A DNA stretch of 64,000 nucleotides from Vitrella brassicaformis CCMP3155. Lineage: Eukaryota > Protista > Chromerida. Of this stretch, positions 3,001 to 20,001 are shown in pieces. Made by a program: the position numbers and the translations under genes. Where the stretch lies: the NCBI GenBank assembly GCA_001179505.1, contig CDMY01000897.1, positions 176,741 through 240,740 on the forward strand. Reading direction: 5' to 3'. Positions within the stretch are counted from its first letter, which is position 1. Each line of letters begins with the position of its first letter. The notes beneath the pieces were generated by a model. That model saw nothing but the letters and a program-made list of their open reading frames with translations, was not told where the DNA came from and searched no databases.

Positions 3001-5248
3001 TCGACGAAGAGCCTGCTCCAGGTAAATGCGAAGAACATGGCGAGGGCGAAGGAGGCGAAGTACTGGGCCACGTTGGTCTTCCACTCGATCTTGCCCCCAC
3101 CCAACTCGAAGATCGTCACGTAGCCCGCGTACATGAAGGTGATCAGGATGGCGAAACCCAGCAGGACACGGAAGAACGGCGTGTACTTCCTAAAAGTCAG
3201 ACAGACCACAGACAGACACACCCATGCAGAAGACACGGCCAGAAGGGAGTGCATTCGGTGTGTGTGCGGCTGTCTGTCTGTCTGTCTGCCAGGCACCCAC
3301 CCATCCTACCTACCTGATTTTGATTTTGAAGTGCTGCAGGTACTCCTTCTCGATCTGTTTGTCCTTGAACCGCAGCGAGAAGCGCCAGAGCATCTCGTCG
3401 ACGTTCCTCTGGCTGCCCGAGGAGGGTGTGCCGCTGACGCTGGTGCTGACGGTGCCGTCCTTGCCGTGCTCACTGCCGCCGCTGAGCTTCCAGTAGTGCA
3501 CACCGCCCGTCAGACATGCCCACGACCGATCCACCAGCAGCGACACAAAGGTCCGCCAATCACGCTTCTTGGCTGCAAGCACCATTGGTTGACACACAAA
3601 CAGACAGAGGGAGAGGGATGGAGGGGCGGGCAAGGGAGGGAGGGAGGGAGGGAGAAGGGGATGTGATGTGGTGTGGTGTGTTGTGTACCACTGCATTCGA
3701 TTTCGACTGTCCGCTGGATGGGGTTGTCGTTGGGGCTGCACTCGATGTGTCTCTGGAGTATCCTGCCCAGCTCCTCGGGCGCCAGCAGCTGCAGCAGCTT
3801 CCGACGCTCCTCAAACCACTCCTGCACCACCGTCAGGGGCGAACGGTAAAACCTGACAGACACACACATCATACAGACAGTCACACAACACATATGATTG
3901 ATCTCTTGATCTCTCTCTCTCTGTTGGCCTGGCCAGACGCTCCGCTCGCTGACCGCTTGTAGACGTGCGAGATGCCCAATTCCATCAAGAAACAGGTGGC
4001 GCAGCTGAGGAGCGTGGCGAGCCAGTACTGCGTGGCCCCGAAGAGGTGCACAGCCACGCCCTCCATGGACTTGTGGGGCCAGCCGGTGACCGAGTAGGTG
4101 AAGATGGAGGGGAAGAAGAGCACCACCGAGAAGCCCAACGTCACGCCGGCGTATAGCCAGGTCCACCGCTGGGTGCACATGGCCACCTTGATGGTGACGG
4201 TGAGGATGGTGTTGAAGAAGGCGGCTGTGCCGAGGGTCATGATGTCGACGGTCTTGCCGTTGGGGAGTGCGGTGGAGACGTCGAAGGCCAGGTAGAGGGC
4301 GCCTGCGTTGATGAGGCCGTACAGCAGACCCTGGAACACCCAGGCCGCGAAAATCCGCGAGTTGAAGCACAGATGACGCTGCCCCTGATGCACAAACACA
4401 CCACACAGCCGCCACAGAGAGAGGGAGAGTGAGAGGCGTGGCGTGCAAAGCACAGCGGAGAGAGGCTGCCAGTGGTCCATCCATCGGCCATCTAGACTCC
4501 TGTGTGCAGTGACTGCACCTCACCTGTTGGTAGAGGATGGGGACGTATGGCAGTATGTGCACGTAGATGTCCTCCTCGAGGAGGCCGTAGAGCACTATGG
4601 GCAGCGACGTCCACACCACGTTGTACGACATCAGCAGCCAGCTCTCGTACAGGGACGTGCCGCTGTAGGCGTTCAGGAAGATAAAGTAAAACTGACTCAC
4701 ACACACACGCGGAGAGAGAGAGAGAACCACAGAACAGACACGTGTGTGTTGTGTGTGGGGGTGTCTCAAAGAGAGAGGGGTGGTGGGTTGTGTGCAGTGC
4801 ACCATCGCATTGCGTACGTTAGGTAGGATGAGGCAGATGTTCTTGAAAAAGGAGTAGAGGATGACGACACTCAGCCTGACGTAGTTGAGCCTCCCGTGGA
4901 CGAACAGCAGCTTCCTGAGGAACCGGAACCGCCCGATTGCGTAGTCGCTCGCACGCACCGCCTGCATCCCTTCGTTGCCGATGATCCCCACACCCACGTC
5001 AGCCTCCTACACACACAACAGAGACCTGTCATCATCATGGCCCTCCCTCTGTGTGTGTGTGTGGTACCTGGAGCATGGAGACGTCGTTGGCACCGTCGCC
5101 GATGGCGAGAGTGGTTGGGTGCGGTTTGAGGCAGCGCTTGACCATACGGACCAGCTCGGCCTTCTGCGCGGGCGCTACGCGGCACGCCAGCACAGACTTG
5201 CACGCACACGCCATCGTCAGAAACAAGTGCTGCAAGAAAGCATCCACA

Positions 5249-5285
<37 letters not shown>

Positions 5286-6198
5286 GAAGCATGCACCTCA
5301 GAGCAGAGCAGTGCCGTGCATGTGTGTGGATGTGTGTGTACCTTACCTTCATTTCGTCCGAGTGCAGGATGTTGTAGAGGGTCCTGCCGTCGACGACGAG
5401 CACGCAGGGCTCCTTGACCTTCTCCTTCTCGCTGGCCTGGAACTTCTTGTAGACGCACCGGATGTCCTCGAGGGCAGTGGCCTCGTTGTGCGCCAGACAC
5501 TCGATGCGCCGGAAGTGCGCCTGGATCAGCTGACACGCGTAGCCCACATTCACAGCCGTCTCGCGCTTGTCGCCTGGACACATACACCGGGGGACATCGA
5601 TCCATCCATCCATCCACCCATACTGCCATGGTCGTGTGTGCGCGCGTGTGTGTAGGATGGTACCGGTGAGCATCCAGACTTTGATGCCGCCGTCAAGCAG
5701 CGCCTTAATGGTTGCGGCCACGCCCGGCTGCAGCTTGTCCTCAATCGCCGTCGCACCCAACAGCTAACACACACGTCACATGACACAGAGAGAGAGAGAA
5801 AGATGCGCGTATGTGTGTGTGTGTGTGTGTGTGCAAGGCCCAGTGAGTGCGTGTGTGAGTATTGACCCACTACCTCGAGATTTGCCTCGAAGTCTTCGGC
5901 GACCTTTTCGAGCCGCTCCTCCCTCTGCAGGAGAGAGCTCCTGGCGTCGTTGTACCGCTTGCTGAAGCTCTCGTACTCACTCTGGTCCAGACGACGGCGA
6001 GCCAACACTGCACACACACAGACAGACATAGAGAGATGGATGGTGCTGCCAGGGACGACCGGGTGTGAATGTCTGGACGTACCCATTGTCCTGAGTCCCT
6101 TGACGGCGAACTCGTTGATGTGCCGGCGGACCTTGGCGATCTGCTCGTTCTGGTTGGGCGCCAGACGCTCAAGCATTGCACTGTCGGCACCCTGCACA

Positions 6199-6238
<40 letters not shown>

Positions 6239-9200
6239 AGACACAGAGACAAACACAGAGAGAGGGAGAGGGAGATCCACCCACCAGCCCATCCCATCAC
6301 ACCACACCGTACCTTGCAGTAGAGCATGGCGCCCTCCTTGCCATGTTCCCTGACGACGATGCTCATCCTTTTCCTGTTGCTGTTGAACTCGTTGATCCCC
6401 ACGATCTGCACGGTCTGCGGCTCCCCCTGGATGTCCAAGGTGAGAGTGGTCGAGGTCCGCGGCGGGATGAGCTGGTAGCCAAGGCAGCTGGCAGCCACCA
6501 CAAAGGCTTCCTCGTCAGGATTGGCGGCCTGGTAATGGAACTGAGTCCTGCCCTTGTCGAAGTAGCTCTTGCGGATCTCGTGCACGTTGCTCGCCATCCT
6601 GATGGGGGCGGGGCGGGGCTTCTCCTGGTCGTAGTACTGGGCCGACAGCACGTGGGAGTCCACACTCATGCTGAAGTTGGCAACGTTGGTCGCGGAGCTC
6701 ACGTCAACTGCCGTCGCATTGCTCCCGCCCGTCGCGGCCATGTCATGTTCGTGTTTCTCCTGCTGCTGCTGCATGATGGCGGCCATCGAGGGATGCATCT
6801 GCTTGAGCCGCTCGGTCAGCAGCTCGCGGCCCCGCTCGATGGTGTCGTTGGTGGTGCTGTTGTTTGCGTTGACCTGGCCGGCGTGTGTGTGCCGCTGCAT
6901 GCGCCGCGAGTGTGAGAGGGGGGAGAAGGGATTGCAGTGGGAGAGCGTGCAGGGGCCCTCCTGGCTCTCTGGTCGAGATACGGGGTGCCGCTCGGAAGGG
7001 ATGACGGTGTGGCAGAGGGCCATGACTTTCAGAAACGCGTCGATCTTCTCGCTGCGCTCGTCGTTGGCCTCCAGGTCCCTGTGTGACAACAGAGAGAGAA
7101 TTCACACAGATGGATTGAGATGAAATGAGATGAGATGGGTCAGTCAGTGAAGTGCACTGGCGCAGTACAGAACGTGTGCCTCTGGTTCCCCTAGCTACCT
7201 GAGTATCCGTGGATCTTTGAAGCGGCATCGAGGGTGCGTCCGGATCGACGCAGGAGCTGACCACACACACACGCACAGACACACACACACATGCATCTTC
7301 AGTCTGGGGGATGAGTGCAGTGCGTCTAGTCTGTCCCTCCCTCCCTCCCACTTTTGCTCTCACTTACATGCTCTAGTTGACCTGGATCCCTGCGAGAATG
7401 GCGAGGGCGGGCTCTTGCCCCGTACCACCCCGTTCACCACCTCCCCCCCACCCCCGTCAGCACCCACAGGGGCCACCACCATGCAGGCCCCACACGCCTC
7501 GTCATACATGTCGCTCTCCCTGCTGGTGTACAGACCCGGGTCGGTGTAATGGTGCACCGACCGACGCACAGCCGAGTTGGCGGGCGACGAGGCGGCCGAG
7601 GCGTCCTCGCCGTCGCCCCTGCGAGAGGACACGCCCATGTCTGGCTCGGTGGTCAGGGCCTCATTGCCCACGTCCTCATTGCCGATGTCCTGCATCTGAT
7701 CGTCCAGATTGTCAGACTCGCTGGAGCTGTCGGACGAATGGTCGTCCTCGAAGGGCTGCGGGACGGGGGCGAAGGAGTGGAAGAGGTCATCCTGGCTGAG
7801 TGGGGCGGTGAGGGGCATCTGGTCGGAGTGATCGGGCATGACGATGTCCTCCCCCTCGGCGTGGTCGAGCGCGTAGTGCACCCTCGACGCCACGTTGTCC
7901 ATGTCAATCATCTCCTGGCTGACCTCGTGCGGCGGCCGTCTACCCTGGCCCTGAGAGTCGTCGTCCACAAAGTGGCGGCCGTCGTAAGGACTCAGGGCGT
8001 GCGCATCGTGCCAGGGGGTGTACTCCTCCAGTCCCATGTTGTCGCGGGAAGCCGACGCAGCATTGGTCATGGGGAGGGAGATGGGCAGCGCGGGGCTGTG
8101 GCTGCTCTCGAGCTCGTCTGCCTCCTGGGGAGTCGCGAGTCGTGGGTTGAGAGCCATCGCCAGCCCCAAATCTGGCGCAGTGGCCGTCCGCTGATACTTG
8201 CCGAAGGCAACGGCGTCAGACTGAACACATACAAACACATACACACACACATCGCCCATCCACACAGCAGATCTATCTGCGGATCGGGGCCGTGTGCGTG
8301 CCTGTGTGGCGACGGGAAAGCTTCGTGGGGGTCCGTCGTCTTGTCCGTCCATGGGCATGGGAATTGGGATGAGGGGGTCGGCGACGCGCGGCTGGGGGTG
8401 GGGATGGGCATGGGTGTGGGGGTAAGGGGGCGGCGGGGGCGGGTGTCTTGGGAGCTTGATCCTCTCCTTCTTGCCGTACTTGCGGCCAGCTATCGAACAC
8501 ATCGCAAACTCCATCTCGTTCTCTGCGACAGGGGGACAACACAACACAACACAACACACATAGGAAATGTGTCAGTCAGCGGGCTGGTCAGTCAATTGCT
8601 GCCTTGCCCTGCCCTGCCCTGGTCTGCTCTCACCGACCTGTGATTGTGCCGGTTTTGTCAGAGAAGACGTATTCGATTTGCCCAAGGTCGTCGTTGAGGT
8701 TGGCCGTCCTTGCCTGCGCCTTGACCACCGTCGACTCGCCCGGACTGCCGTCGCGCCCAGGCTCTGCCGCCCCCTTGACGTACTCCAGATCGGGGTCGTT
8801 CTCGATGAAGATAGCCTGGATGAACCGGACGAAGTCGATGGTGACACAGAGGGAGATCGGCACGAGGTTGTTGTAGAGGATGGCGAATGTGATGATGCGC
8901 AGCCAGTCGTGGTATCGTTTGACGCTCTCGCCCGCGAAGTAGAGGAACACCTCTGGCTCCTTGTCGGTGAACCGGAAGGACAGCCACACCGAGATGGCCA
9001 CCATGATGGTCAGCACCGCCGCGATGATGAAGAGGTACCAGTTGACGTCGCGCTCAATCTTGGACCGCTTGTTGCGCGGCGGGCGGGAGTTTCGGTGAAG
9101 GCGCGTGTCCACCCCTGCACACACACATCGACGACATCGACAGACGAGTGAGGGAGCTAAGTGCCAAACATCCAGCCCACCCCACACCCTCCTCTCTCGC

Positions 9201-10956
9201 CCAGCTTGGCTCACCGGTGTAGATGACGACACCGTAGAGGTACTCGGTGTTCCTGAGCCTTGACCCCTTGAGGATGAAGTTCTTGGCGTCGATGGACGTG
9301 TTGCGCGGATACTCGTCCAGCTTGAGCGTCCCAGTAAAGGTGTCCAGCCGGTTTGACGGCGGCTCGCAGCTGATCTTCCCACGCTTAGACTTGAGCGTGC
9401 CGTGCGTCTCGGCTGACGGACGAGACAGACCCCAAATCCATTCAACACGCACACAAACAGCAGTGCAGTCTGTGTTGATTACTTACTCTTGGTGTCTTCA
9501 ACGGCGTTTTTTGGTTTGAGGCTGGTTTCTCCGTCGAGCATGGCGGTCTCGACGTAGGCAATGCCTTCGGTGGGGTCGTTGGTGGCCAGGATGACCATGT
9601 CGGCAGGCACGTCGTCGCCGTCCTCCAGACGCACAATGTCGCCCACCTGCACACACCATACCATCCACACACACACACACACACACAAGACACACACCCA
9701 TGTCCAGTCCACAGTACTGAGTGTGTGTTCATTGTGAGGGTCGATGGGATGGGCGTGTAAGTGAAGTGTTTATGGTATGGTGTGTTCAGCTGACACGCAT
9801 GAAATACATAATATCAACACGATAGATCTAATGCCTCGCTGCACCACCGGCGCAGCTTAGATTCAGTGCCCGTAATCATCCCGACCACCGCCAACGCACT
9901 CCACTCACACACATGCCCCTCCATCCCATCTCATCTCTCTCCCCTCCCCTCTCCCCCACTGCCCCCACTGACCTTGACGTCAGCCCATCTGGCCCGTTTC
10001 AGTTTGTTGGAGTTTGGTTCGGGGTCGAGAATGTCGCACTTCCTGTTGTTGACCTTGACGTCGTTCTTGTACCGACGCCAATCCTCGTAACCGTCCTTCA
10101 CCATCTGATAGAGATAGAGGGATTCATTGACACACATGACATATATGACCCCCCACAGACAGACAAACAGGCAAGCCACGCCATAATCCCCTGGCTGCCC
10201 TGCCGCCTAGTTCTGCGAACGTACCGTGACGAACAAAACGATACTCAGAGGGACGATCGTCGCCCATCTGAACCGAAGTATCAAATCAAGACACACACGT
10301 ACACACACTCATGCCATGCCATGCCATGCCTCGAGCGGCCTGCCTGTCTTCGGGCAAATGTTAAAGGTGTGCCGGCCCGGCCCCTCCCTGCTCGGCTTAC
10401 GATGACGTGGGCGAGACGTTGAGCGGCAGCAGCTGCAGGATGGACACGACCAGGAACCACCAGTTGGCCCACCGATGGAACTGCTCCCACAAGTTCTTGG
10501 GCACAAAGTTCCATACCTACGCCACAGACAGACAGGGGAGCGCCAATCAGCCAACCAGCCAATCGGTCTGTCTGTCTGTCTGTCTGTCGGTCCTTTGCCC
10601 ACCCACCCTGTAGCGATTGGTGCGGACATTATTGTCAGGGAAGCTCGCGTTGTGCTCCTCCTCCTCGTCGCCGGGGGAAGCATTGATGCGAATCTAAGAA
10701 ACAGACAGACAGACAGACATCAGACACAACCGACAGGGCAATAAAGTAAGCAGTGTTGCGATGCAACGTTCTTGGCAATGGGTCAAGTCATGTGTCCGCC
10801 GTTGTCCTCTGCTCTCACCCTTCGCCAGCCGTGTCCAAGTCCGTCAGCGGGCTGATGCATGGAACTGTGAGTGTGCGACAGGCCGAAGGGGCCGAATCTC
10901 GGGGAGGTCCCCGTCTTCCGCTCCGACGACGGCAAACTCACCAGCTCCACACTCAT
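1..10956 (-). CDS. P4-type ATPase (flippase)-guanylyl cyclase fusion, alveolate GC-alpha type; multi-exon, 3' end runs off the window (second cyclase domain not included)
   Basis: Spliced exons give NNVRTNRYR-VWNFVPKNLWEQFHRWAN, VKDGYEDWRR, ETAMLDGETSLK (A domain), YVFSDKTGT (phospho-Asp), FLKVMALCHTV, EFNSNRKRMS, LYCKGADS, GATAIEDKLQ, VWMLTGDK, LAIGDGANDVSM, GIIGNEGMQAVRASDY, then TM helices and a cyclase domain (VIFCDI, KIETVAETY, KIGVHTG, PQYALFGDTVNTASRM, VKGKGLMDTYLL). Start ATG is 10956 or 10860. Confidence 0.95.
2592..2891. other. Assembly gap (300 N) flanked by poly-G, inside an intron of the GC gene
   Basis: N run with G homopolymers on both sides. Confidence 0.99.
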
Positions 10957-13038: not shown

Positions 13039-13485
13039 ACGAATGGATGGATGGATGGCCGGCCACGCCACCGTCATGTATATGTGTGTGCCTATACCTG
13101 TCATGTGGATGTGTGTAGAAAGCTAGACTGACTTGAGAGCCTCATTGATTCGTTGCAGGCGCGGCGCGCGTGTGTGTACAGTTTTGCCATGGGTGCCATG
13201 GCAGACAGAACACAGCGTGCTGTGCTTGGATTTGGGAGTAGGGCTATCCACGCATCCGTCCATCCATCCGTCCGTCCATTCATCCATCCATCCAGTCGCC
13301 AAATCGCTCGCTACCTATGCAAGCACAAACCACCCACTCGAGCCATGGGAAACAGTCGCCCGGCCCGGCAATCATCTCAATACATCCCCCAACCAACCAA
13401 CCAACCAACTGACCAACCAACCAGTCGGTTAATTCTGTCTACCGTCCCCCCTCTATTTACATGTATGTGTCTGTCTGTCTGTCAG

Positions 13486-16400
13486 TCAGCCGTGCATCCA
13501 AATCCTCGCCGCCCCACCGCCCGACACCCGCCGCGCCTTCTTCCGCCTGTGGGCCTCGTCCTTCTCATCCACCAGGGTAAACTGCTGCCACGGCCTGGGG
13601 TCGCTGTCCCACGGCCCCCGCCCACTGCCCCTGGTCGCCGCCAGCACATCATCTGGGAAACCGCCCTCGCGCTCCGCGATCAGCGGCGCCCAGTCGTGGA
13701 TGTAGGGGCCGTCCCCGTCGCCGCCCTGCCTCTTGCGCTTGCCGGGCTTCTTCTTGTTTGCTGGGGGGGCTGGCGCTGGCTTGCCATCCTTGCCCTTGCT
13801 GCTGCCGGGTTGGTCTTGTGTGCCGTCCTGTCCTGAGGCTGATGCTGATGCCGATGCCGATGCGGCAGTGGCGGCGGCGGCGGCTGCGGGCGATCCGTGC
13901 ACGCGGCGGTCACGGGTGGGAGGGTCGCCGCCGATGGTGCCGCTGCACCCATGAGTCAATGGACACGCAATGAGGAGACGCAATGAGTGGCCGTGTTTGT
14001 GTGTGTGAGCTGTGTGAGTTGTGTGATGCCTACGTGCATTTGCTGGATCCGCAAAAGCACTGGAGGCCCTTGGCGCGGCCGAAGCCGTCAGACATGTAGT
14101 CGTACGTCAGCGGCTCGCCCTCCTCTATGTCTCGAATGGCGAAGAAACCTAACATATGCAGCGCAGCAGCCCCCCAGCAAACGAAACCGCACCCATGGCA
14201 GATATGATGGATGAATGCACTGACTGACTGACCGATCTGTGGGATGCATCCCTTGCTAGGGTCGCCGCAGAAGATGACCTTGCGCTCCATGTTGGGCTCG
14301 CACGAGTGGTTGGCGTACCGCATTGCGTTGCCGAAGTACATGGCGTCCACCGCAGGGGCCAGAGCGCTGCACACAGACATGGCACACACAAGCGTGGGGA
14401 TGCATGGCCCTTCCCGTGTGTCTGATGTGCTGTGGTTGTGGCTGTGGTTGTGGCTGTGGATCTGCCTCACTCGGCCCCCTTTGGCAGCTGGTCGAACGGC
14501 AGCACGCTGATGGCGTACTGGTACTTGCCGCCGGTGGGGTCGTTCTCGTACTTCAACACCCGCGCACGCCACTCGCCCAGCGTGATGACCTCACCCGCAA
14601 ACTCACCCACAAAGTCACCCGCACCTATCGCACTCTACACACACACGCACACACACAAGTGCAATCGATGTGGTTAGGGGGAGAGGGGTGTGTGGTGTGG
14701 TGTGGTGTGGTGTGGTGTACCTGCGCTACGAGTCCCCACCCCAACTTGTCTGAATGGGAGATGCACACCGGCACGCCCAACTGGCCCAACCAAGCAGGGC
14801 TCCTGACACCACACACACACACACACACCCCAACACCCCTCTCTCTGCTGGTGTGTGGGAGGACGGGTGGATGTGTCGTCTGGTGCGTACCGTACCAGTT
14901 GCTGCAGACATGGTCCACGTTGGCCGTTTTGCAGGGGGATGACTCCGAGCAGTAGGCCACCGCCCCCGGCCACAGCTTGTCCGTATTGAGCCCCGCGGAG
15001 CAGACCGTGCCGTCCTCGTCCTTCCACGCCCACTCGCCGCTCTCCTCGTCCCAACTGACACACGGCCATCCGTCCATCCATCCACCCACGGTGATGGTAG
15101 TGGGCGTTGGTTGGTGATTCTTTCGTTCGTACTATTTCTCCTTCTCAGCGATGGCCCTCTTGTCAGGCGGGACGCACCCGGCGCAGATGTGTGGGAGCGG
15201 CGGGTTCATCACGGGCGGCTTGTGCAGCTGCAGCTGGTAGGGCATGTAGGAGGGCAGGTTGTTCAGCACGGCCCCAACGCCGTAGCCGTCAGTGCTGACC
15301 ACCGGCACATCGCAACTCTGACACAGATGACACACACACACACACGGGCACATGTCATGTGGGAGGGAGAGAGGGAGAGGGGTACCTCTCTGCGCTGAGC
15401 TATGTCGAGCATGGGGTCCCAGTCGGGGAGCGGCAGCTGGCAGAGAATCGACATGCTGATGTTGTCGTCACGCTCCTGCAGCTGGGGGAACATCGTGCAG
15501 GCTACCTGATGACACACACATCACACACAAGAGAGAGCAAGAGACAGACCCACATCAGCACAACCACTCCGGGCAGATTGTGTGGGGGTGTGGGTGGGTG
15601 GTTGGGGGGAGCGGTGTGACGTCACACACACACACACAGACACACACACACACACAGGCGTACGGACGTCAGACTCGAGTGTCCTCGGGATGGGCAGTAT
15701 CTCAGTCATTTGCACGTTGTCGTCTTTGTCCTTGTACTGCACCACCAGCAAGTAGGGGAAGAAGTCGTGGGCACCGAACGCCTCGCCCTCGAACCACCCC
15801 TGGCTCGCGTCTATGTACTCCACCAACCTGTCAAGCGACTCGTCACCGTGCTCCTACACACACACACACACACACACAATGGATGGATGGATGGATGGAT
15901 GGATGGCGGCGAACGGATCGCCCTGACTGTCTGTCTCTCTGTCTGTCTGCTCTGCTTGTCCTCACCTGACGGAAGGTTTCGTCATTTTCCTTGACGTACC
16001 CGCTGAGCACCTTCTCGATCTGCTGCTTCATGGCGTTGTGCTGGTCCAGCAGCACCAGCTCCAGCGTCGTGAGGCGCAAGGTCTGGTGGGCGATGCGGGT
16101 GGTCGCGTCAGCCGCGGCGTCGTGGTCGGGAGTCGGGAACAGCAGCGGGATGGCGCGCGTCGGCTCCCTGTTGAGCATCTTCCTCTGCACACAGAGAGAG
16201 AAGAATATGCCTGTGGCTGGCTGTGTTGATGTGGTGTGTGGTGTGTGGGTGTGAGGTGTGGCGGGTGAACCCACCTGCTCCTTGATGAAGTCGCTGCTGT
16301 TCCTGTCAGCGAGTGCGCGCTTCTCTGTGCCGGCGGGTGGGAGGCAGCTCTGGACCTCGTTGGCCCTGGGAGCGCGAAGCAGCACGTAGTCGGCCATCTG

Positions 16401-17128
16401 GGTGCTCTGCAACACAAACTAAAGAGAGAACCGGGGAATCGGGAAGGTGCGTGTGTTGGTCAGCCATCCATCCATCCATCCATCCCCCCAGCCACGGACC
16501 TTCCAGACGCGTCTGCGCGCCCCTCTCTCGACGGTGGTGTCGACGTAGGCGTTCCTCACGGTGAACAAACCGTCATACCGGAACCCCCTGCACACACACA
16601 CACACACAGTATGGACGCCAGGACGCATGTGTGTGTGTGTGTGTGACCTCCATGCCCTCCCACCTCAACCCCGCCCGTCCTGAGTATATCATTCACTCAC
16701 CATGGGGGCGCGTACTGCGAGAGTGCCTTGTACCCGCGGACGAAGCGGATCTTCTCGCCCTTGGCATAGGCACTCAGCAGCGCGTCGTTGCCCCTGGACA
16801 GCGTCTGGTCGTCCTCCTCGGCCTTGCCCTCACCCGCATACACCACACGACTACCGCGGTCCCAGTCATCTAAACACACACACAGAGAGAGATGTCATAT
16901 GGCAATAGGCACACGTGTGTGTGAGAGGGGTATGTGTGTGCGTGGGTGTGCGGTAGCTGACCCTTGTATCCTCCGTTGCTGACGACGCTAGTGCAGATGC
17001 CGTCCCTGAAGGCGATACCGGCCACCATCTGCTTGTGCACACCAAACAGGAGCATCGCGTTACGGTACGGAAACACCGTCCCTGGCTCAAACTCTGCAGA
17101 GAGAGAGAGAGTGAGAGTGAGTGAGAGT

Positions 17129-17168
<40 letters not shown>

Positions 17169-17616
17169 CCCACACACACGTCGTGAGAGTGTGATGTGTG
17201 TGGTGTATGCGGATTGGATACCGAGCAGCGGTTTGCCCTTGACATCTACAGGCTCGTCGAGGCCCAGCCACTCCTGGATGGACCTGAAGACCTTGTTGTG
17301 GTCCTTCAGGGCCTCGAACTCCTGGTCCCATCGCTGCAGCAGAAACTGACCTGCAGCCAGCCAGCCAGCCATGTGACGCATACGCACACACACGCTCGTT
17401 GCCGATGGATGGATGCCCTTTCTCCGAGCGCACACGTGTGCCCACCTTTCTGTTTGGGGGTGAGCGACCGATACAGCCCCCTGCACACACGGACACGGGC
17501 ACGACGCATCACCATCCATCCATCATCCACACATCCCACCCCACAGCGCTGCCGGGTGGATGAATGGCTTACTTGTCGAGGAGCTCCCCCTCCTTGAACT
17601 GGCGCTGCTGCGCCAT
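13486..17616 (-). CDS. SUVH-like histone H3K9 methyltransferase: SRA/YDG + Tudor/Agenet-like + Cys-containing pre-SET + SET + post-SET + basic tail
   Basis: GVHKQMVAGI...SVVSNGGYKDDWDRGSRVVYAGEG...GFRYDGLF (SRA); VEYIDASQGWFEG (Tudor-like); KLGWGLVAQ, GEFAGEVI, RYANHSCEPN, EPLTYDY, CFCGSSKC (SET and post-SET). Confidence 0.9.
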
Positions 17617-17789
17617 CTGTCGCCCTGCTATCCTCCTGCCTTATGGTGCGATTTGTCCTCGGCGCCCAGTTTTAGAGCGGGAGGGGTCAAACACAAAGAG
17701 ATCTACGAGACGTGATTTCACGGGAATTCTTGTGTTTGAACACATCCGCGCACGACAGAGACCGGATTTCATCGGCAGCAGGCGCCACC

Positions 17790-20001
<2,212 letters not shown>

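What the first reader, a model, noticed from the sequence alone, without database searches (positions are those of the whole stretch)
13486..17616. Plant-SUVH-like SRA-SET methyltransferase with an extra Tudor/Agenet-like module in an apparent alveolate
Seen: SRA with intact 5mC-pocket residues (SNGGYKDD...VYAG, YDG), a VEYIDASQGWFEG Tudor-like exon (about 15660-15835), a pre-SET with fewer Cys than usual, an intact SET (NHSC, LTYDY) and post-SET. Known: SRA+SET coupling (KYP/SUVH4-6) is the classic plant DNA-methylation/H3K9me feedback loop, and Tyr at the F/Y switch favours mono/di-methylation. Inference: one protein could read 5mC and methyl-lysine and write H3K9me, implying a self-reinforcing heterochromatin loop in a lineage related to apicomplexans.
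Basis: partly seen in the sequence, partly recalled or inferred. Interest (0 to 1): 0.7.

Follow-up and report, generated by a model that had tools for sequence, protein, structure and literature searches.

The report
Chromerid SRA-SET histone methylase gene
An expressed gene of the alga Vitrella, a photosynthetic relative of malaria parasites, joins a reader of marked DNA bases (SRA) to a histone-methylating SET domain, as plant SUVH proteins do. The supposed extra Tudor module is not supported, and what the protein reads and writes is untested.

Summary
The gene is real. It has 17 GT-AG exons on the minus strand (13486-17616) and encodes an 853-aa protein identical to an unnamed Vitrella brassicaformis database entry. 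Pfam finds SAD_SRA (residues 71-204, E 5e-27) and SET (558-681, E 1.5e-19). The base-pocket Tyr/Asp/Tyr, GWG, NHSC, LTYDY and a CxCx4C post-SET are intact. Spliced contigs from three runs put SRA and SET on one mRNA.

The "Tudor/Agenet-like" exon is not supported:
- It has no Pfam or significant PDB hit.
- It has no relative among 1.84 billion representative proteins.
- Its first half is not conserved in the gene's own paralogues.
- AlphaFold gave an unusable model.

What is conserved (residues about 349-425) is a family-specific linker module that leads into the pre-SET region.

The pre-SET is eroded: six Cys and no Pfam hit. A paralogue on contig C356 keeps a canonical Pre-SET, so the family is SUV39-type by architecture. 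However, the catalytic core scores slightly higher against H3K36 enzymes.

Vitrella has at least four SRA-SET loci. This scan has already reported two of them (on other DNA of this genome). One published survey lists only DNMT2 and a DNMT4-like enzyme in Vitrella and leaves its 5mC status blank, so the proposed 5mC/H3K9me loop remains inference.

Verdict: a new variant of a known kind, of moderate interest.

The parts
13486..17616 (-). Whole CDS of the SRA-SET gene, 17 exons, 853 codons plus stop. Exons: E1 17616-17573, E2 17480-17446, E3 17350-17222, E4 17093-16962, E5 16869-16701, E6 16587-16500, E7 16418-16275, E8 16184-15966, E9 15853-15668, E10 15505-15386, E11 15317-15133, E12 15054-14896, E13 14802-14721, E14 14634-14471, E15 14366-14233, E16 14148-14034, E17 13942-13486.
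   Evidence: Read. The translation equals P0001. Spliced contigs confirm introns 13942|14034, 14148|14233, 14366|14471, 15054|15133, 16184|16275 and 16869|16962.
17223..17598 (-). N-terminal helical region (residues about 7-69) that precedes the SRA. It is conserved in paralogue C356 (31% identity).
   Evidence: tblastn. No Pfam or PDB match.
16404..17091 (-). SAD/SRA (YDG) domain, residues 71-204, spread over exons E4-E7.
   Evidence: Pfam E 5.1e-27. PDB phmmer: TagI 7.6e-13, SUVH5 4.3e-12, SUVH6 1.6e-10, UHRF1 2.8e-10. The residues aligned to SUVH5 chain positions 55, 57 and 67 are conserved as Tyr, Asp and Tyr.
15770..15853 (-). It is not conserved in the paralogues.
   Evidence: The paralogues carry Gly/Ala-rich low complexity here. 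Only weak SH3 matches, E 0.2-1.7. No relatives.
15309..15769 (-). Family-specific middle module (residues about 349-425; second half of E9, all of E10, start of E11). It ends in the D.SQ.RE motif that opens the pre-SET.
   Evidence: Conserved in C356 and C508 (alignments A1 and A2). No Pfam family in any member. No relative in metagenome contigs.
14745..15317 (-). Eroded pre-SET zone (residues 423-556) with six Cys where the usual count, from my own knowledge of SUV39-type enzymes, is nine.
   Evidence: No Pre-SET or AWS hit. Cys census. Alignment to the Cys-rich pre-SET of C356 shows lost Cys.
14096..14741 (-). SET domain (residues 558-681; E13-E16), with GWG, NHSC (14311-14300) and LTYDY.
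   Evidence: Pfam E 1.5e-19. PDB hits.
14036..14059 (-). Post-SET CxCx4C (residues 694-701).
   Evidence: Aligns to the post-SET of SETD2.
13489..13941 (-). C-terminal tail (residues 703-853). It is low-complexity Ala/Ser, with two basic clusters at 765 and 834 that look like nuclear localisation signals.
   Evidence: No Pfam family. The nuclear-localisation reading is inference.

Best explanation
This is an expressed nuclear chromatin gene of Vitrella brassicaformis. It belongs to a small chromerid family (at least four loci) of SRA-SET proteins built like plant SUVH enzymes.

Likely mechanism: the SRA domain flips a modified cytosine (most likely 5mC) out of the duplex and holds it in a Tyr/Asp/Tyr pocket. 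This tethers the C-terminal SET/post-SET module, which methylates a nearby histone H3 lysine. That lysine is most likely K9, taken to the mono- or di-methyl state.

The region between SRA and SET is not a Tudor reader. It is a family-specific linker module followed by a pre-SET that has lost several zinc-binding Cys.

Shown: gene structure, expression, single transcript, domain identity, conserved catalytic and pocket motifs, and paralogy with a canonical SRA-PreSET-SET gene.

Inferred: the ligand (5mC), the substrate (H3K9), catalytic competence despite the eroded pre-SET, and any feedback loop.
For: - Pfam finds SRA at 5.1e-27 and SET at 1.5e-19 in one 853-aa protein.
- Spliced contigs overlap across the gene: X1 record 2 spans E15 to E8, X6 record 16 spans E9 to E5 and beyond, and X6 record 15 spans E17 to E10.
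- The pocket residues aligned to SUVH5 chain positions 55, 57 and 67 are conserved. These correspond to Y416, D418 and Y428 by my own numbering from the literature. The thumb motif reads VAGI.
- GWG, NHSC, LTYDY and CFCGSSKC are intact.
- The best in-genome relative of the SET region is C356 (75.9 bits). C356 carries a Pfam Pre-SET hit (8.3e-6) and shares the same order of parts along its whole length.
- There are 18 residues between NHSCEPN and the IGFFA strand. HMMER has to open gaps against SETD2 at this point. By my own knowledge this loop length is SUV39-like.
- The G9a alignment reaches back into the pre-SET zone (query 81-273).
- The language-model neighbours are 16 plant SRA/Pre-SET/SET clusters at 0.92-0.93, followed by SUV39H1-family clusters.
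- A DNMT4-like C5 methyltransferase is reported for Vitrella (PMC10538959).
Against: - The SET core scores higher against the H3K36 enzymes SETD2, NSD2 and ASH1L (73.9-70.3 bits) than against G9a (64.9), DIM-5 (58.3) or SUV39H2 (52.8). Plant SUVH chains are not in the top 60.
- No Pre-SET hit, and only six Cys. By my knowledge of DIM-5-type enzymes the zinc cluster is needed for activity.
- The SRA is as close to the bacterial SRA-HNH enzyme TagI as to SUVH5.
- My six-frame genome search found only DNMT2-like cytosine methyltransferase genes.
- The published survey lists no DNMT1, DNMT3, DNMT5, CMT or UHRF1 and records no 5mC status for Vitrella.
- I could not build a phylogeny with outside reference sequences.
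Confidence: 0.55

Rival explanations
1. The SET domain writes a mark other than H3K9 (H3K36-type, or a non-histone lysine). The protein would then couple base reading to a non-heterochromatic mark.
For: The top PDB sequence matches are SETD2, NSD2, ASH1L and Set2. The post-SET and following residues (CFCGSSKCTGTIGG) align closely to SETD2. There is no Pre-SET hit.
Against: - No AWS hit either.
- The nearest relative over the whole length is a Pre-SET-bearing paralogue.
- Core-motif similarity does not discriminate. A SET1/Trx-type Vitrella gene (C153) scores 68.5 bits on two short exons.
Confidence: 0.2
2. The protein is mainly a reader or adaptor with little or no catalytic activity, like plant SUVH2/SUVH9, because the pre-SET zinc cluster is eroded.
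For: Six Cys in the pre-SET zone, against the Cys-rich paralogue C356. One paralogue (C508) has clearly lost NHSC, the catalytic Tyr motif and the post-SET, so the family does produce pseudo-enzymes.
Against: All SET catalytic and cofactor motifs and the post-SET are intact in this gene. This would not be expected in a long-standing pseudo-enzyme.
Confidence: 0.15
3. The SRA reads something other than 5mC: 5hmC, another modified or damaged base, or hemi-modified sites left by an unknown enzyme. Vitrella lacks the usual maintenance and de novo DNMTs.
For: The survey table lists DNMT1, DNMT3, DNMT5, DNMT6, CMT and UHRF1 as not detected. My genome search found only DNMT2-like loci. The SRA is equally close to a bacterial SRA.
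Against: The Tyr/Asp/Tyr pocket residues are those aligned with the 5mC-binding SRA domains of SUVH5 and UHRF1. A DNMT4-like enzyme is reported. No Tet_JBP match was found, but the control search rang nowhere, so this says little.
Confidence: 0.2
4. One reading: exon E9 is a Tudor/Agenet barrel that reads methyl-lysine, making the protein a combined 5mC reader, methyl-lysine reader and H3K9 writer.
For: The exon has a pattern of alternating hydrophobic and aromatic residues that looks like an SH3-like barrel. Weak SH3 matches at E 0.2-1.7.
Against: - No Tudor, Agenet, chromo, MBT, PWWP or SH3 Pfam hit at E<=10 in this protein or in the paralogues' equivalent regions.
- No relative among 1.84 billion representatives.
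- The VEYIDASQGWFEG half is replaced by low complexity in the paralogues.
- The AlphaFold model had mean pLDDT 35.8 and drew this stretch as helix.
Confidence: 0.05

Closest known systems
Plant SUVH4/5/6 (KYP-type SRA-PreSET-SET-postSET H3K9 methyltransferases)
   Same: - The order of parts is the same: N-terminal helical region, SRA, then SET and post-SET.
- The SRA pocket residues are conserved.
- The SRA loop reads DQTLSRGNDAL, which from memory resembles the plant DQKLERGN motif.
- Tyr sits at the F/Y-switch position, as I recall for KYP.
- The family also contains a dead-SET member, as plants have SUVH2/9.
   Different: - The organism is not a plant; it is a chromerid alveolate.
- The pre-SET zinc cluster is eroded in this member.
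- About 190 extra residues lie between SRA and pre-SET, including a conserved family-specific module.
- The SET core is not closest to plant SUVH chains in PDB.
- Common ancestry with plant SUVH versus an independent fusion is unresolved.
SUV39/G9a/DIM-5 clade (Pre-SET-SET-postSET H3K9 methyltransferases)
   Same: The SET and post-SET motifs match. The loop after NHSCxPN is long. Paralogue C356 has the D.S.G.E..P.P..N.VD motif and a Pfam Pre-SET.
   Different: This member gives no Pre-SET hit. It has no chromodomain or ankyrin repeats; an SRA takes their place.
SETD2/NSD/ASH1L (AWS-SET-postSET H3K36 methyltransferases)
   Same: These give the highest sequence scores to the SET core and post-SET.
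   Different: There is no AWS domain. The loop after NHSCxPN is five residues longer. The full-length paralogue is of Pre-SET type.
UHRF1 and bacterial SRA-HNH enzymes (TagI)
   Same: The SRA fold and the base-flipping pocket are shared. The thumb motif VAGI is the one I recall from UHRF1. TagI is the best single PDB match.
   Different: There is no UBL, TTD, PHD or RING domain, and no HNH nuclease. The effector here is a SET domain.

Membership tests
Plant SUVH (SRA-PreSET-SET-postSET) | [quoted passage not shown] | tested here: met
   Pfam SAD_SRA at 71-204 (5.1e-27) and SET at 558-681 (1.5e-19) in P0001. Overlapping spliced contigs show one mRNA.
Plant SUVH (SRA-PreSET-SET-postSET) | Base-flipping pocket residues of the SRA (Tyr, Asp, Tyr) | tested here: met
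   In the HMMER alignment to SUVH5 chain 3q0b, positions 55, 57 and 67 are all conserved.
Plant SUVH (SRA-PreSET-SET-postSET) | Pre-SET zinc cluster (nine Cys; Pfam PF05033) | tested here: not met
   No PF05033 hit at E<=10. Six Cys in residues 425-545. Paralogue C356 does meet this feature.
Plant SUVH (SRA-PreSET-SET-postSET) | Intact SET catalytic motifs and post-SET CxCx4C | tested here: met
   GWG 558, NHSC 638, LTYDY 677, CFCGSSKC 694.
Plant SUVH (SRA-PreSET-SET-postSET) | Phylogenetic grouping of SRA and SET with plant SUVH | tested here: inconclusive
   The SRA scores 48.8 bits to SUVH5 and 51.2 to bacterial TagI. For the SET, SUVH chains are absent from the top 60 PDB hits. No tree with reference sequences could be built.
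Plant SUVH (SRA-PreSET-SET-postSET) | 5mC binding and H3K9 methyltransferase activity | not testable with these tools
   This needs binding and enzyme assays.
SET2/NSD/ASH1 (H3K36 methyltransferases) | AWS domain directly before the SET domain | tested here: not met
   No PF17907 hit in P0001:380-560 or in the whole protein at E<=10.
SET2/NSD/ASH1 (H3K36 methyltransferases) | SET core closest to this clade | tested here: inconclusive
   It gives the best PDB scores (73.9-70.3 bits), but these are only 6-9 bits above G9a. The alignment needs gaps in the loop after NHSCxPN.
Tudor/Agenet royal-family readers | Profile match to a Tudor, Agenet, chromo, MBT or PWWP family | tested here: not met
   No Pfam family at E<=10 for E9, for P0001:290-400, for P0001:199-485, or for the paralogue regions.
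Tudor/Agenet royal-family readers | Conserved barrel with aromatic cage | tested here: not met
   The first half of the exon is not conserved in the paralogues. The AlphaFold model has pLDDT 35.8 and shows no barrel. The model is too poor to count as positive evidence of another fold.
UHRF1 | UBL, tandem Tudor, PHD and RING domains around the SRA | tested here: not met
   Only SRA and SET are found.

The most novel reading that the evidence does not exclude
Chromerids keep a plant-like coupling of cytosine methylation to H3K9 methylation. It would be run by a multi-gene SRA-SET family together with a DNMT4-like methyltransferase. It either arose independently of plant SUVH or was inherited from a deep ancestor or an algal endosymbiont, and was lost on the way to parasitic apicomplexans.
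Probability: 0.25. Interest if true: 0.7.

Novelty: new variant of a known kind. Interest (0 to 1): 0.45.

Why it matters
In the papers I could reach, SRA-SET fusions are described only in green plants and green algae (PMC5725981). There they are the link between DNA methylation and H3K9me2 heterochromatin.

A family of such genes in the closest photosynthetic relatives of apicomplexans would mean one of two things. Either this coupling is older or more widely spread than thought, or it was invented twice. It would also give a concrete test case for how heterochromatin is targeted in a lineage that lacks DNMT1, DNMT3 and UHRF1.

The value is limited for three reasons:
- The protein is already in public databases with SRA and SET marked automatically.
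- This scan has already reported sister genes of the same family.
- Nothing about its ligand or substrate is known.

Tried and rejected
- **Word-index protein search.** I ran it on the whole protein, the SET region and the SRA region. It returned only the protein itself and one grass SET protein, so it was too insensitive to show distribution.
- **Exhaustive HMMER job.** I spent it on exon E9. This showed the exon has no relatives and gave me the full-length record. It left no exhaustive search for the whole family.
- **Metagenome scan** with the three-paralogue alignment of the middle module: no relative found.
- **AlphaFold2** on residues 199-485 with a four-row alignment: mean pLDDT 35.8. 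The model was unusable, so I ran no fold search and did not spend the second job.
- **PDB sequence searches.** The pre-SET zone alone and the N-terminal 100 residues gave nothing significant.
- **Own-genome searches** for Tet_JBP, Chromo_shadow and AWS found nothing. The control genomes did not ring either, so these blanks say little.
- **DNMT4-like gene.** My six-frame PF00145 and TIGR00675 searches did not find the gene reported in the literature.
- **SH3 reading of exon E9.** I rejected it. The matches are at E 0.2-1.7 and fall in the part that the paralogues do not conserve.
- **Literature searches** for SRA-SET proteins in alveolates or other non-plants found no description. The last search was badly framed and wasted.
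- The spliced model of this gene and of the paralogues was searched exon by exon by reference. Whole-protein searches used the database's own record, P0001.
Full report
**Gene model and expression**

I read 17 exons with GT..AG introns on the minus strand between 17616 (ATG) and 13486 (stop). The coordinates are listed under parts. The CDS is 2562 nt, or 853 codons.

A HMMER search with exon E9 returned a database protein, P0001, of exactly 853 aa. Its sequence is the same as my exon-by-exon reading. NCBI holds it as an unnamed product of Vitrella brassicaformis CCMP3155, and UniRef calls it "SET domain-containing protein". The genome behind the window is 72.7 Mb in 1064 contigs.

Contigs of runs X1, X2 and X6 lack the introns, so they derive from RNA. 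Run X3 carries the introns and is genomic. The spliced contigs confirm six introns directly: 13942|14034, 14148|14233, 14366|14471, 15054|15133, 16184|16275 and 16869|16962. The lengths of the unlisted stretches fit the remaining exons.

The contigs overlap across the gene. X1 record 2 runs from E15 to E8. X6 record 16 runs from E9 to E5 and further upstream. X6 record 15 runs from E17 to E10. SRA and SET therefore lie on one spliced mRNA.

The 15054|15133 junction selects the longer form of E11.

I searched the spliced model exon by exon by reference and did not join exons. Whole-protein searches used the database record P0001.

**Domains that are certain**

Pfam finds SAD_SRA on exons E4 and E5 separately (1.4e-8 and 1.7e-6). 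SET hits E15 and E16 (8.1e-6 and 2e-3). On the whole protein, SAD_SRA covers residues 71-204 (5.1e-27) and SET covers 558-681 (1.5e-19).

In the HMMER alignment to the SUVH5 SRA structure, chain positions 55, 57 and 67 are conserved. By my own numbering from the literature these are the two stacking Tyr and the Asp of the 5mC pocket. The thumb reads VAGI, as I recall for UHRF1.

The SET has GWG (558), NHSC (638) and LTYDY (677), and the post-SET is CFCGSSKC (694). That this favours mono- or di-methylation is established knowledge from DIM-5 and G9a work, not tested here.

The tail (703-853) is low-complexity and carries two basic clusters that look like nuclear localisation signals. That reading is inference.

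**The "Tudor/Agenet-like" exon**

Exon E9 (15853-15668, residues 321-382) is real and expressed. Nothing supports a Tudor or Agenet fold:

- There is no Pfam family at E<=10 for the exon, for residues 290-400, or for 199-485.
- The best PDB sequence matches are the C-terminal halves of SH3 domains at E 0.2-1.7.
- Among 1.84 billion representative proteins, only the protein itself matches. The one other hit is a plant LRR kinase that matched through its repeats.
- AlphaFold2 on residues 199-485 with a four-row alignment gave mean pLDDT 35.8. That is too poor to use. For what it is worth, it drew the VEYIDAS stretch as helix followed by a hairpin.

**Paralogues explain the middle region**

Searching the genome with the SRA model found further SRA loci on contigs C356, C508 and C568. 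Each has a SET hit a few kilobases downstream on the same strand.

C356 and C508 align to P0001 along the whole length at 26-36% identity: N-terminal helical region, SRA, middle region, then SET.

The second half is conserved and runs on through E10 into E11, covering residues about 349-425. Its pattern is FFPY.L...Y, then ME.IPIPR.L, then LPL.DWD and D.SQGRE.

This is a family-specific module of unknown fold. It has no Pfam family and no relative in metagenome contigs. It ends in the motif that opens the pre-SET of SUV39-type enzymes. In C356 this reads D.SQGRE..PVP.INTVDDE.P..F.YI, and that exon hits Pfam Pre-SET (8.3e-6).

**Pre-SET and clade of the SET domain**

P0001 gives no Pre-SET or AWS hit. 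It has six Cys in the pre-SET zone. C356 has a Cys-rich, canonical one.

The SET core alone is ambiguous:

| PDB match | Bits |
|---|---|
| SETD2 | 73.9 |
| NSD2 | 70.9 |
| ASH1L | 70.3 |
| G9a | 64.9 |
| DIM-5 | 58.3 |
| SUV39H2 | 52.8 |

Plant SUVH chains are not among the top 60.

Against reading this as H3K36-type:

- There is no AWS domain.
- The loop between NHSCEPN and the next strand is 18 residues, and HMMER must open gaps against SETD2 there.
- The G9a alignment extends back into the pre-SET zone.
- Within the genome the best match of the SET region is the Pre-SET-bearing C356 (75.9 bits). A SET1/Trx-type gene (C153) still reaches 68.5 bits on two short exons, which shows that core similarity does not discriminate.
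- Language-model neighbours are 16 plant SRA/Pre-SET/SET clusters (0.92-0.93). With those left out, the next are SUV39H1-family clusters (0.80-0.82). The latter are leads only.

I place the family in the SUV39-type group by architecture and paralogy. I put about 0.2 on a non-K9 substrate.

**The SRA and the question of 5mC**

The SRA scores about equally against the bacterial SRA-HNH enzyme TagI (7.6e-13), SUVH5 (4.3e-12), SUVH6 and UHRF1. Its origin is therefore open.

My six-frame search for C5 methyltransferases found two loci. Both are DNMT2-like. The one on C929 has the CFT..Y..Y motif that I know as a DNMT2 hallmark.

The supplement of PMC10538959 lists the following for Vitrella:

- DNMT1, DNMT3, DNMT5, DNMT6, other DNA methylases, UHRF1, CDCA7 and HELLS as not detected; the Dim2, DRM and CMT cells of that row are blank.
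- DNMT2 as CEM37813.
- A DNMT4-like domain in the large protein CEM15752.
- 5mC status left blank.

My search did not pick up CEM15752, and I did not type it in.

A writer of 5mC may therefore exist, but whether Vitrella DNA is methylated is unknown. The self-reinforcing loop is an inference with one missing pillar.

**Family and earlier findings**

C508 has RHSEQTN in place of NHSCxPN, no LTYDY and no post-SET. It is a likely pseudo-enzyme, recalling plant SUVH2/9. C568 carries SRA and SET pieces on the minus strand and further SRA pieces on the plus strand.

Two earlier reports of this scan describe a dead-SET SRA protein and a back-to-back SRA-SET pair in this genome. These are probably those loci. 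So the scan has found this family before on other DNA.

**Literature**

In the library I could search, SRA-SET architectures are described for land plants and chlorophytes (PMC5725981). The chromerid genome paper does not mention chromatin. A eukaryote-wide chromatin survey does not mention such fusions in alveolates. I found no paper describing them outside Viridiplantae. This is absence in a partial library, not proof.

**Verdict**

The gene is an SUVH-like SRA-SET protein of a chromerid. It has an eroded pre-SET and a family-specific middle module, not a Tudor domain. I rate it a new variant of a known kind, of moderate interest.

Noticed in passing
window 17712-18806 (+): A PP1-like Ser/Thr phosphatase gene lies head-to-head with the SRA-SET gene. 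Its exons hit STPPase_N and Metallophos. The two coding starts are only about 100-170 bp apart, which suggests a shared bidirectional promoter.
   Followed up: partly
L012 (G000:C356:126000-135999), minus strand, about 4360-7700: A canonical paralogue: N-terminal helices, SRA, middle module, Pfam Pre-SET, SET with NHSC and TFRY, and post-SET CRCGQPGC. It is the best in-genome relative of the gene studied.
   Followed up: partly
L013 (G000:C508:14000-23999), minus strand, about 3200-5850: A paralogue with an altered SRA pocket stretch and a dead SET: RHSEQTN instead of NHSCxPN, no catalytic Tyr motif and no post-SET. It is a likely reader or adaptor, like plant SUVH2/9.
   Followed up: partly
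L017 (G000:C568:16500-26499): SRA and SET pieces lie on the minus strand (6539-6649 and 3603-3797). Further SRA-like pieces lie on the plus strand (8829-8927 and 9275-9394). This is probably the back-to-back SRA-SET pair reported earlier by this scan.
   Followed up: partly
L002-L004 (G000:C929:162284-166560) and L001 (G000:C954:154753-157905): Two DNMT2-like cytosine methyltransferase loci. They are the only PF00145 or TIGR00675 matches in the six-frame genome search. The DNMT4-like protein reported in the literature was not picked up.
   Followed up: partly
window 13400-17700, introns: Introns are rich in (AC)n/(GT)n runs and GGATGG repeats. Read-mapping was cut at these repeats. Another reader has already noted these intron features on this window.
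   Followed up: no
window, below 13400: RNA-derived contig X6 record 15 continues 1368 nt beyond position 13400. This is either a long 3' UTR or run-on into the neighbouring gene.
   Followed up: no
L014 (G000:C441:46000-55999), minus strand, about 4400-5500: A Pre-SET plus SET gene with post-SET CHCGAPEC and no SRA seen nearby. It may be the ordinary SUV39-type enzyme of Vitrella.
   Followed up: no
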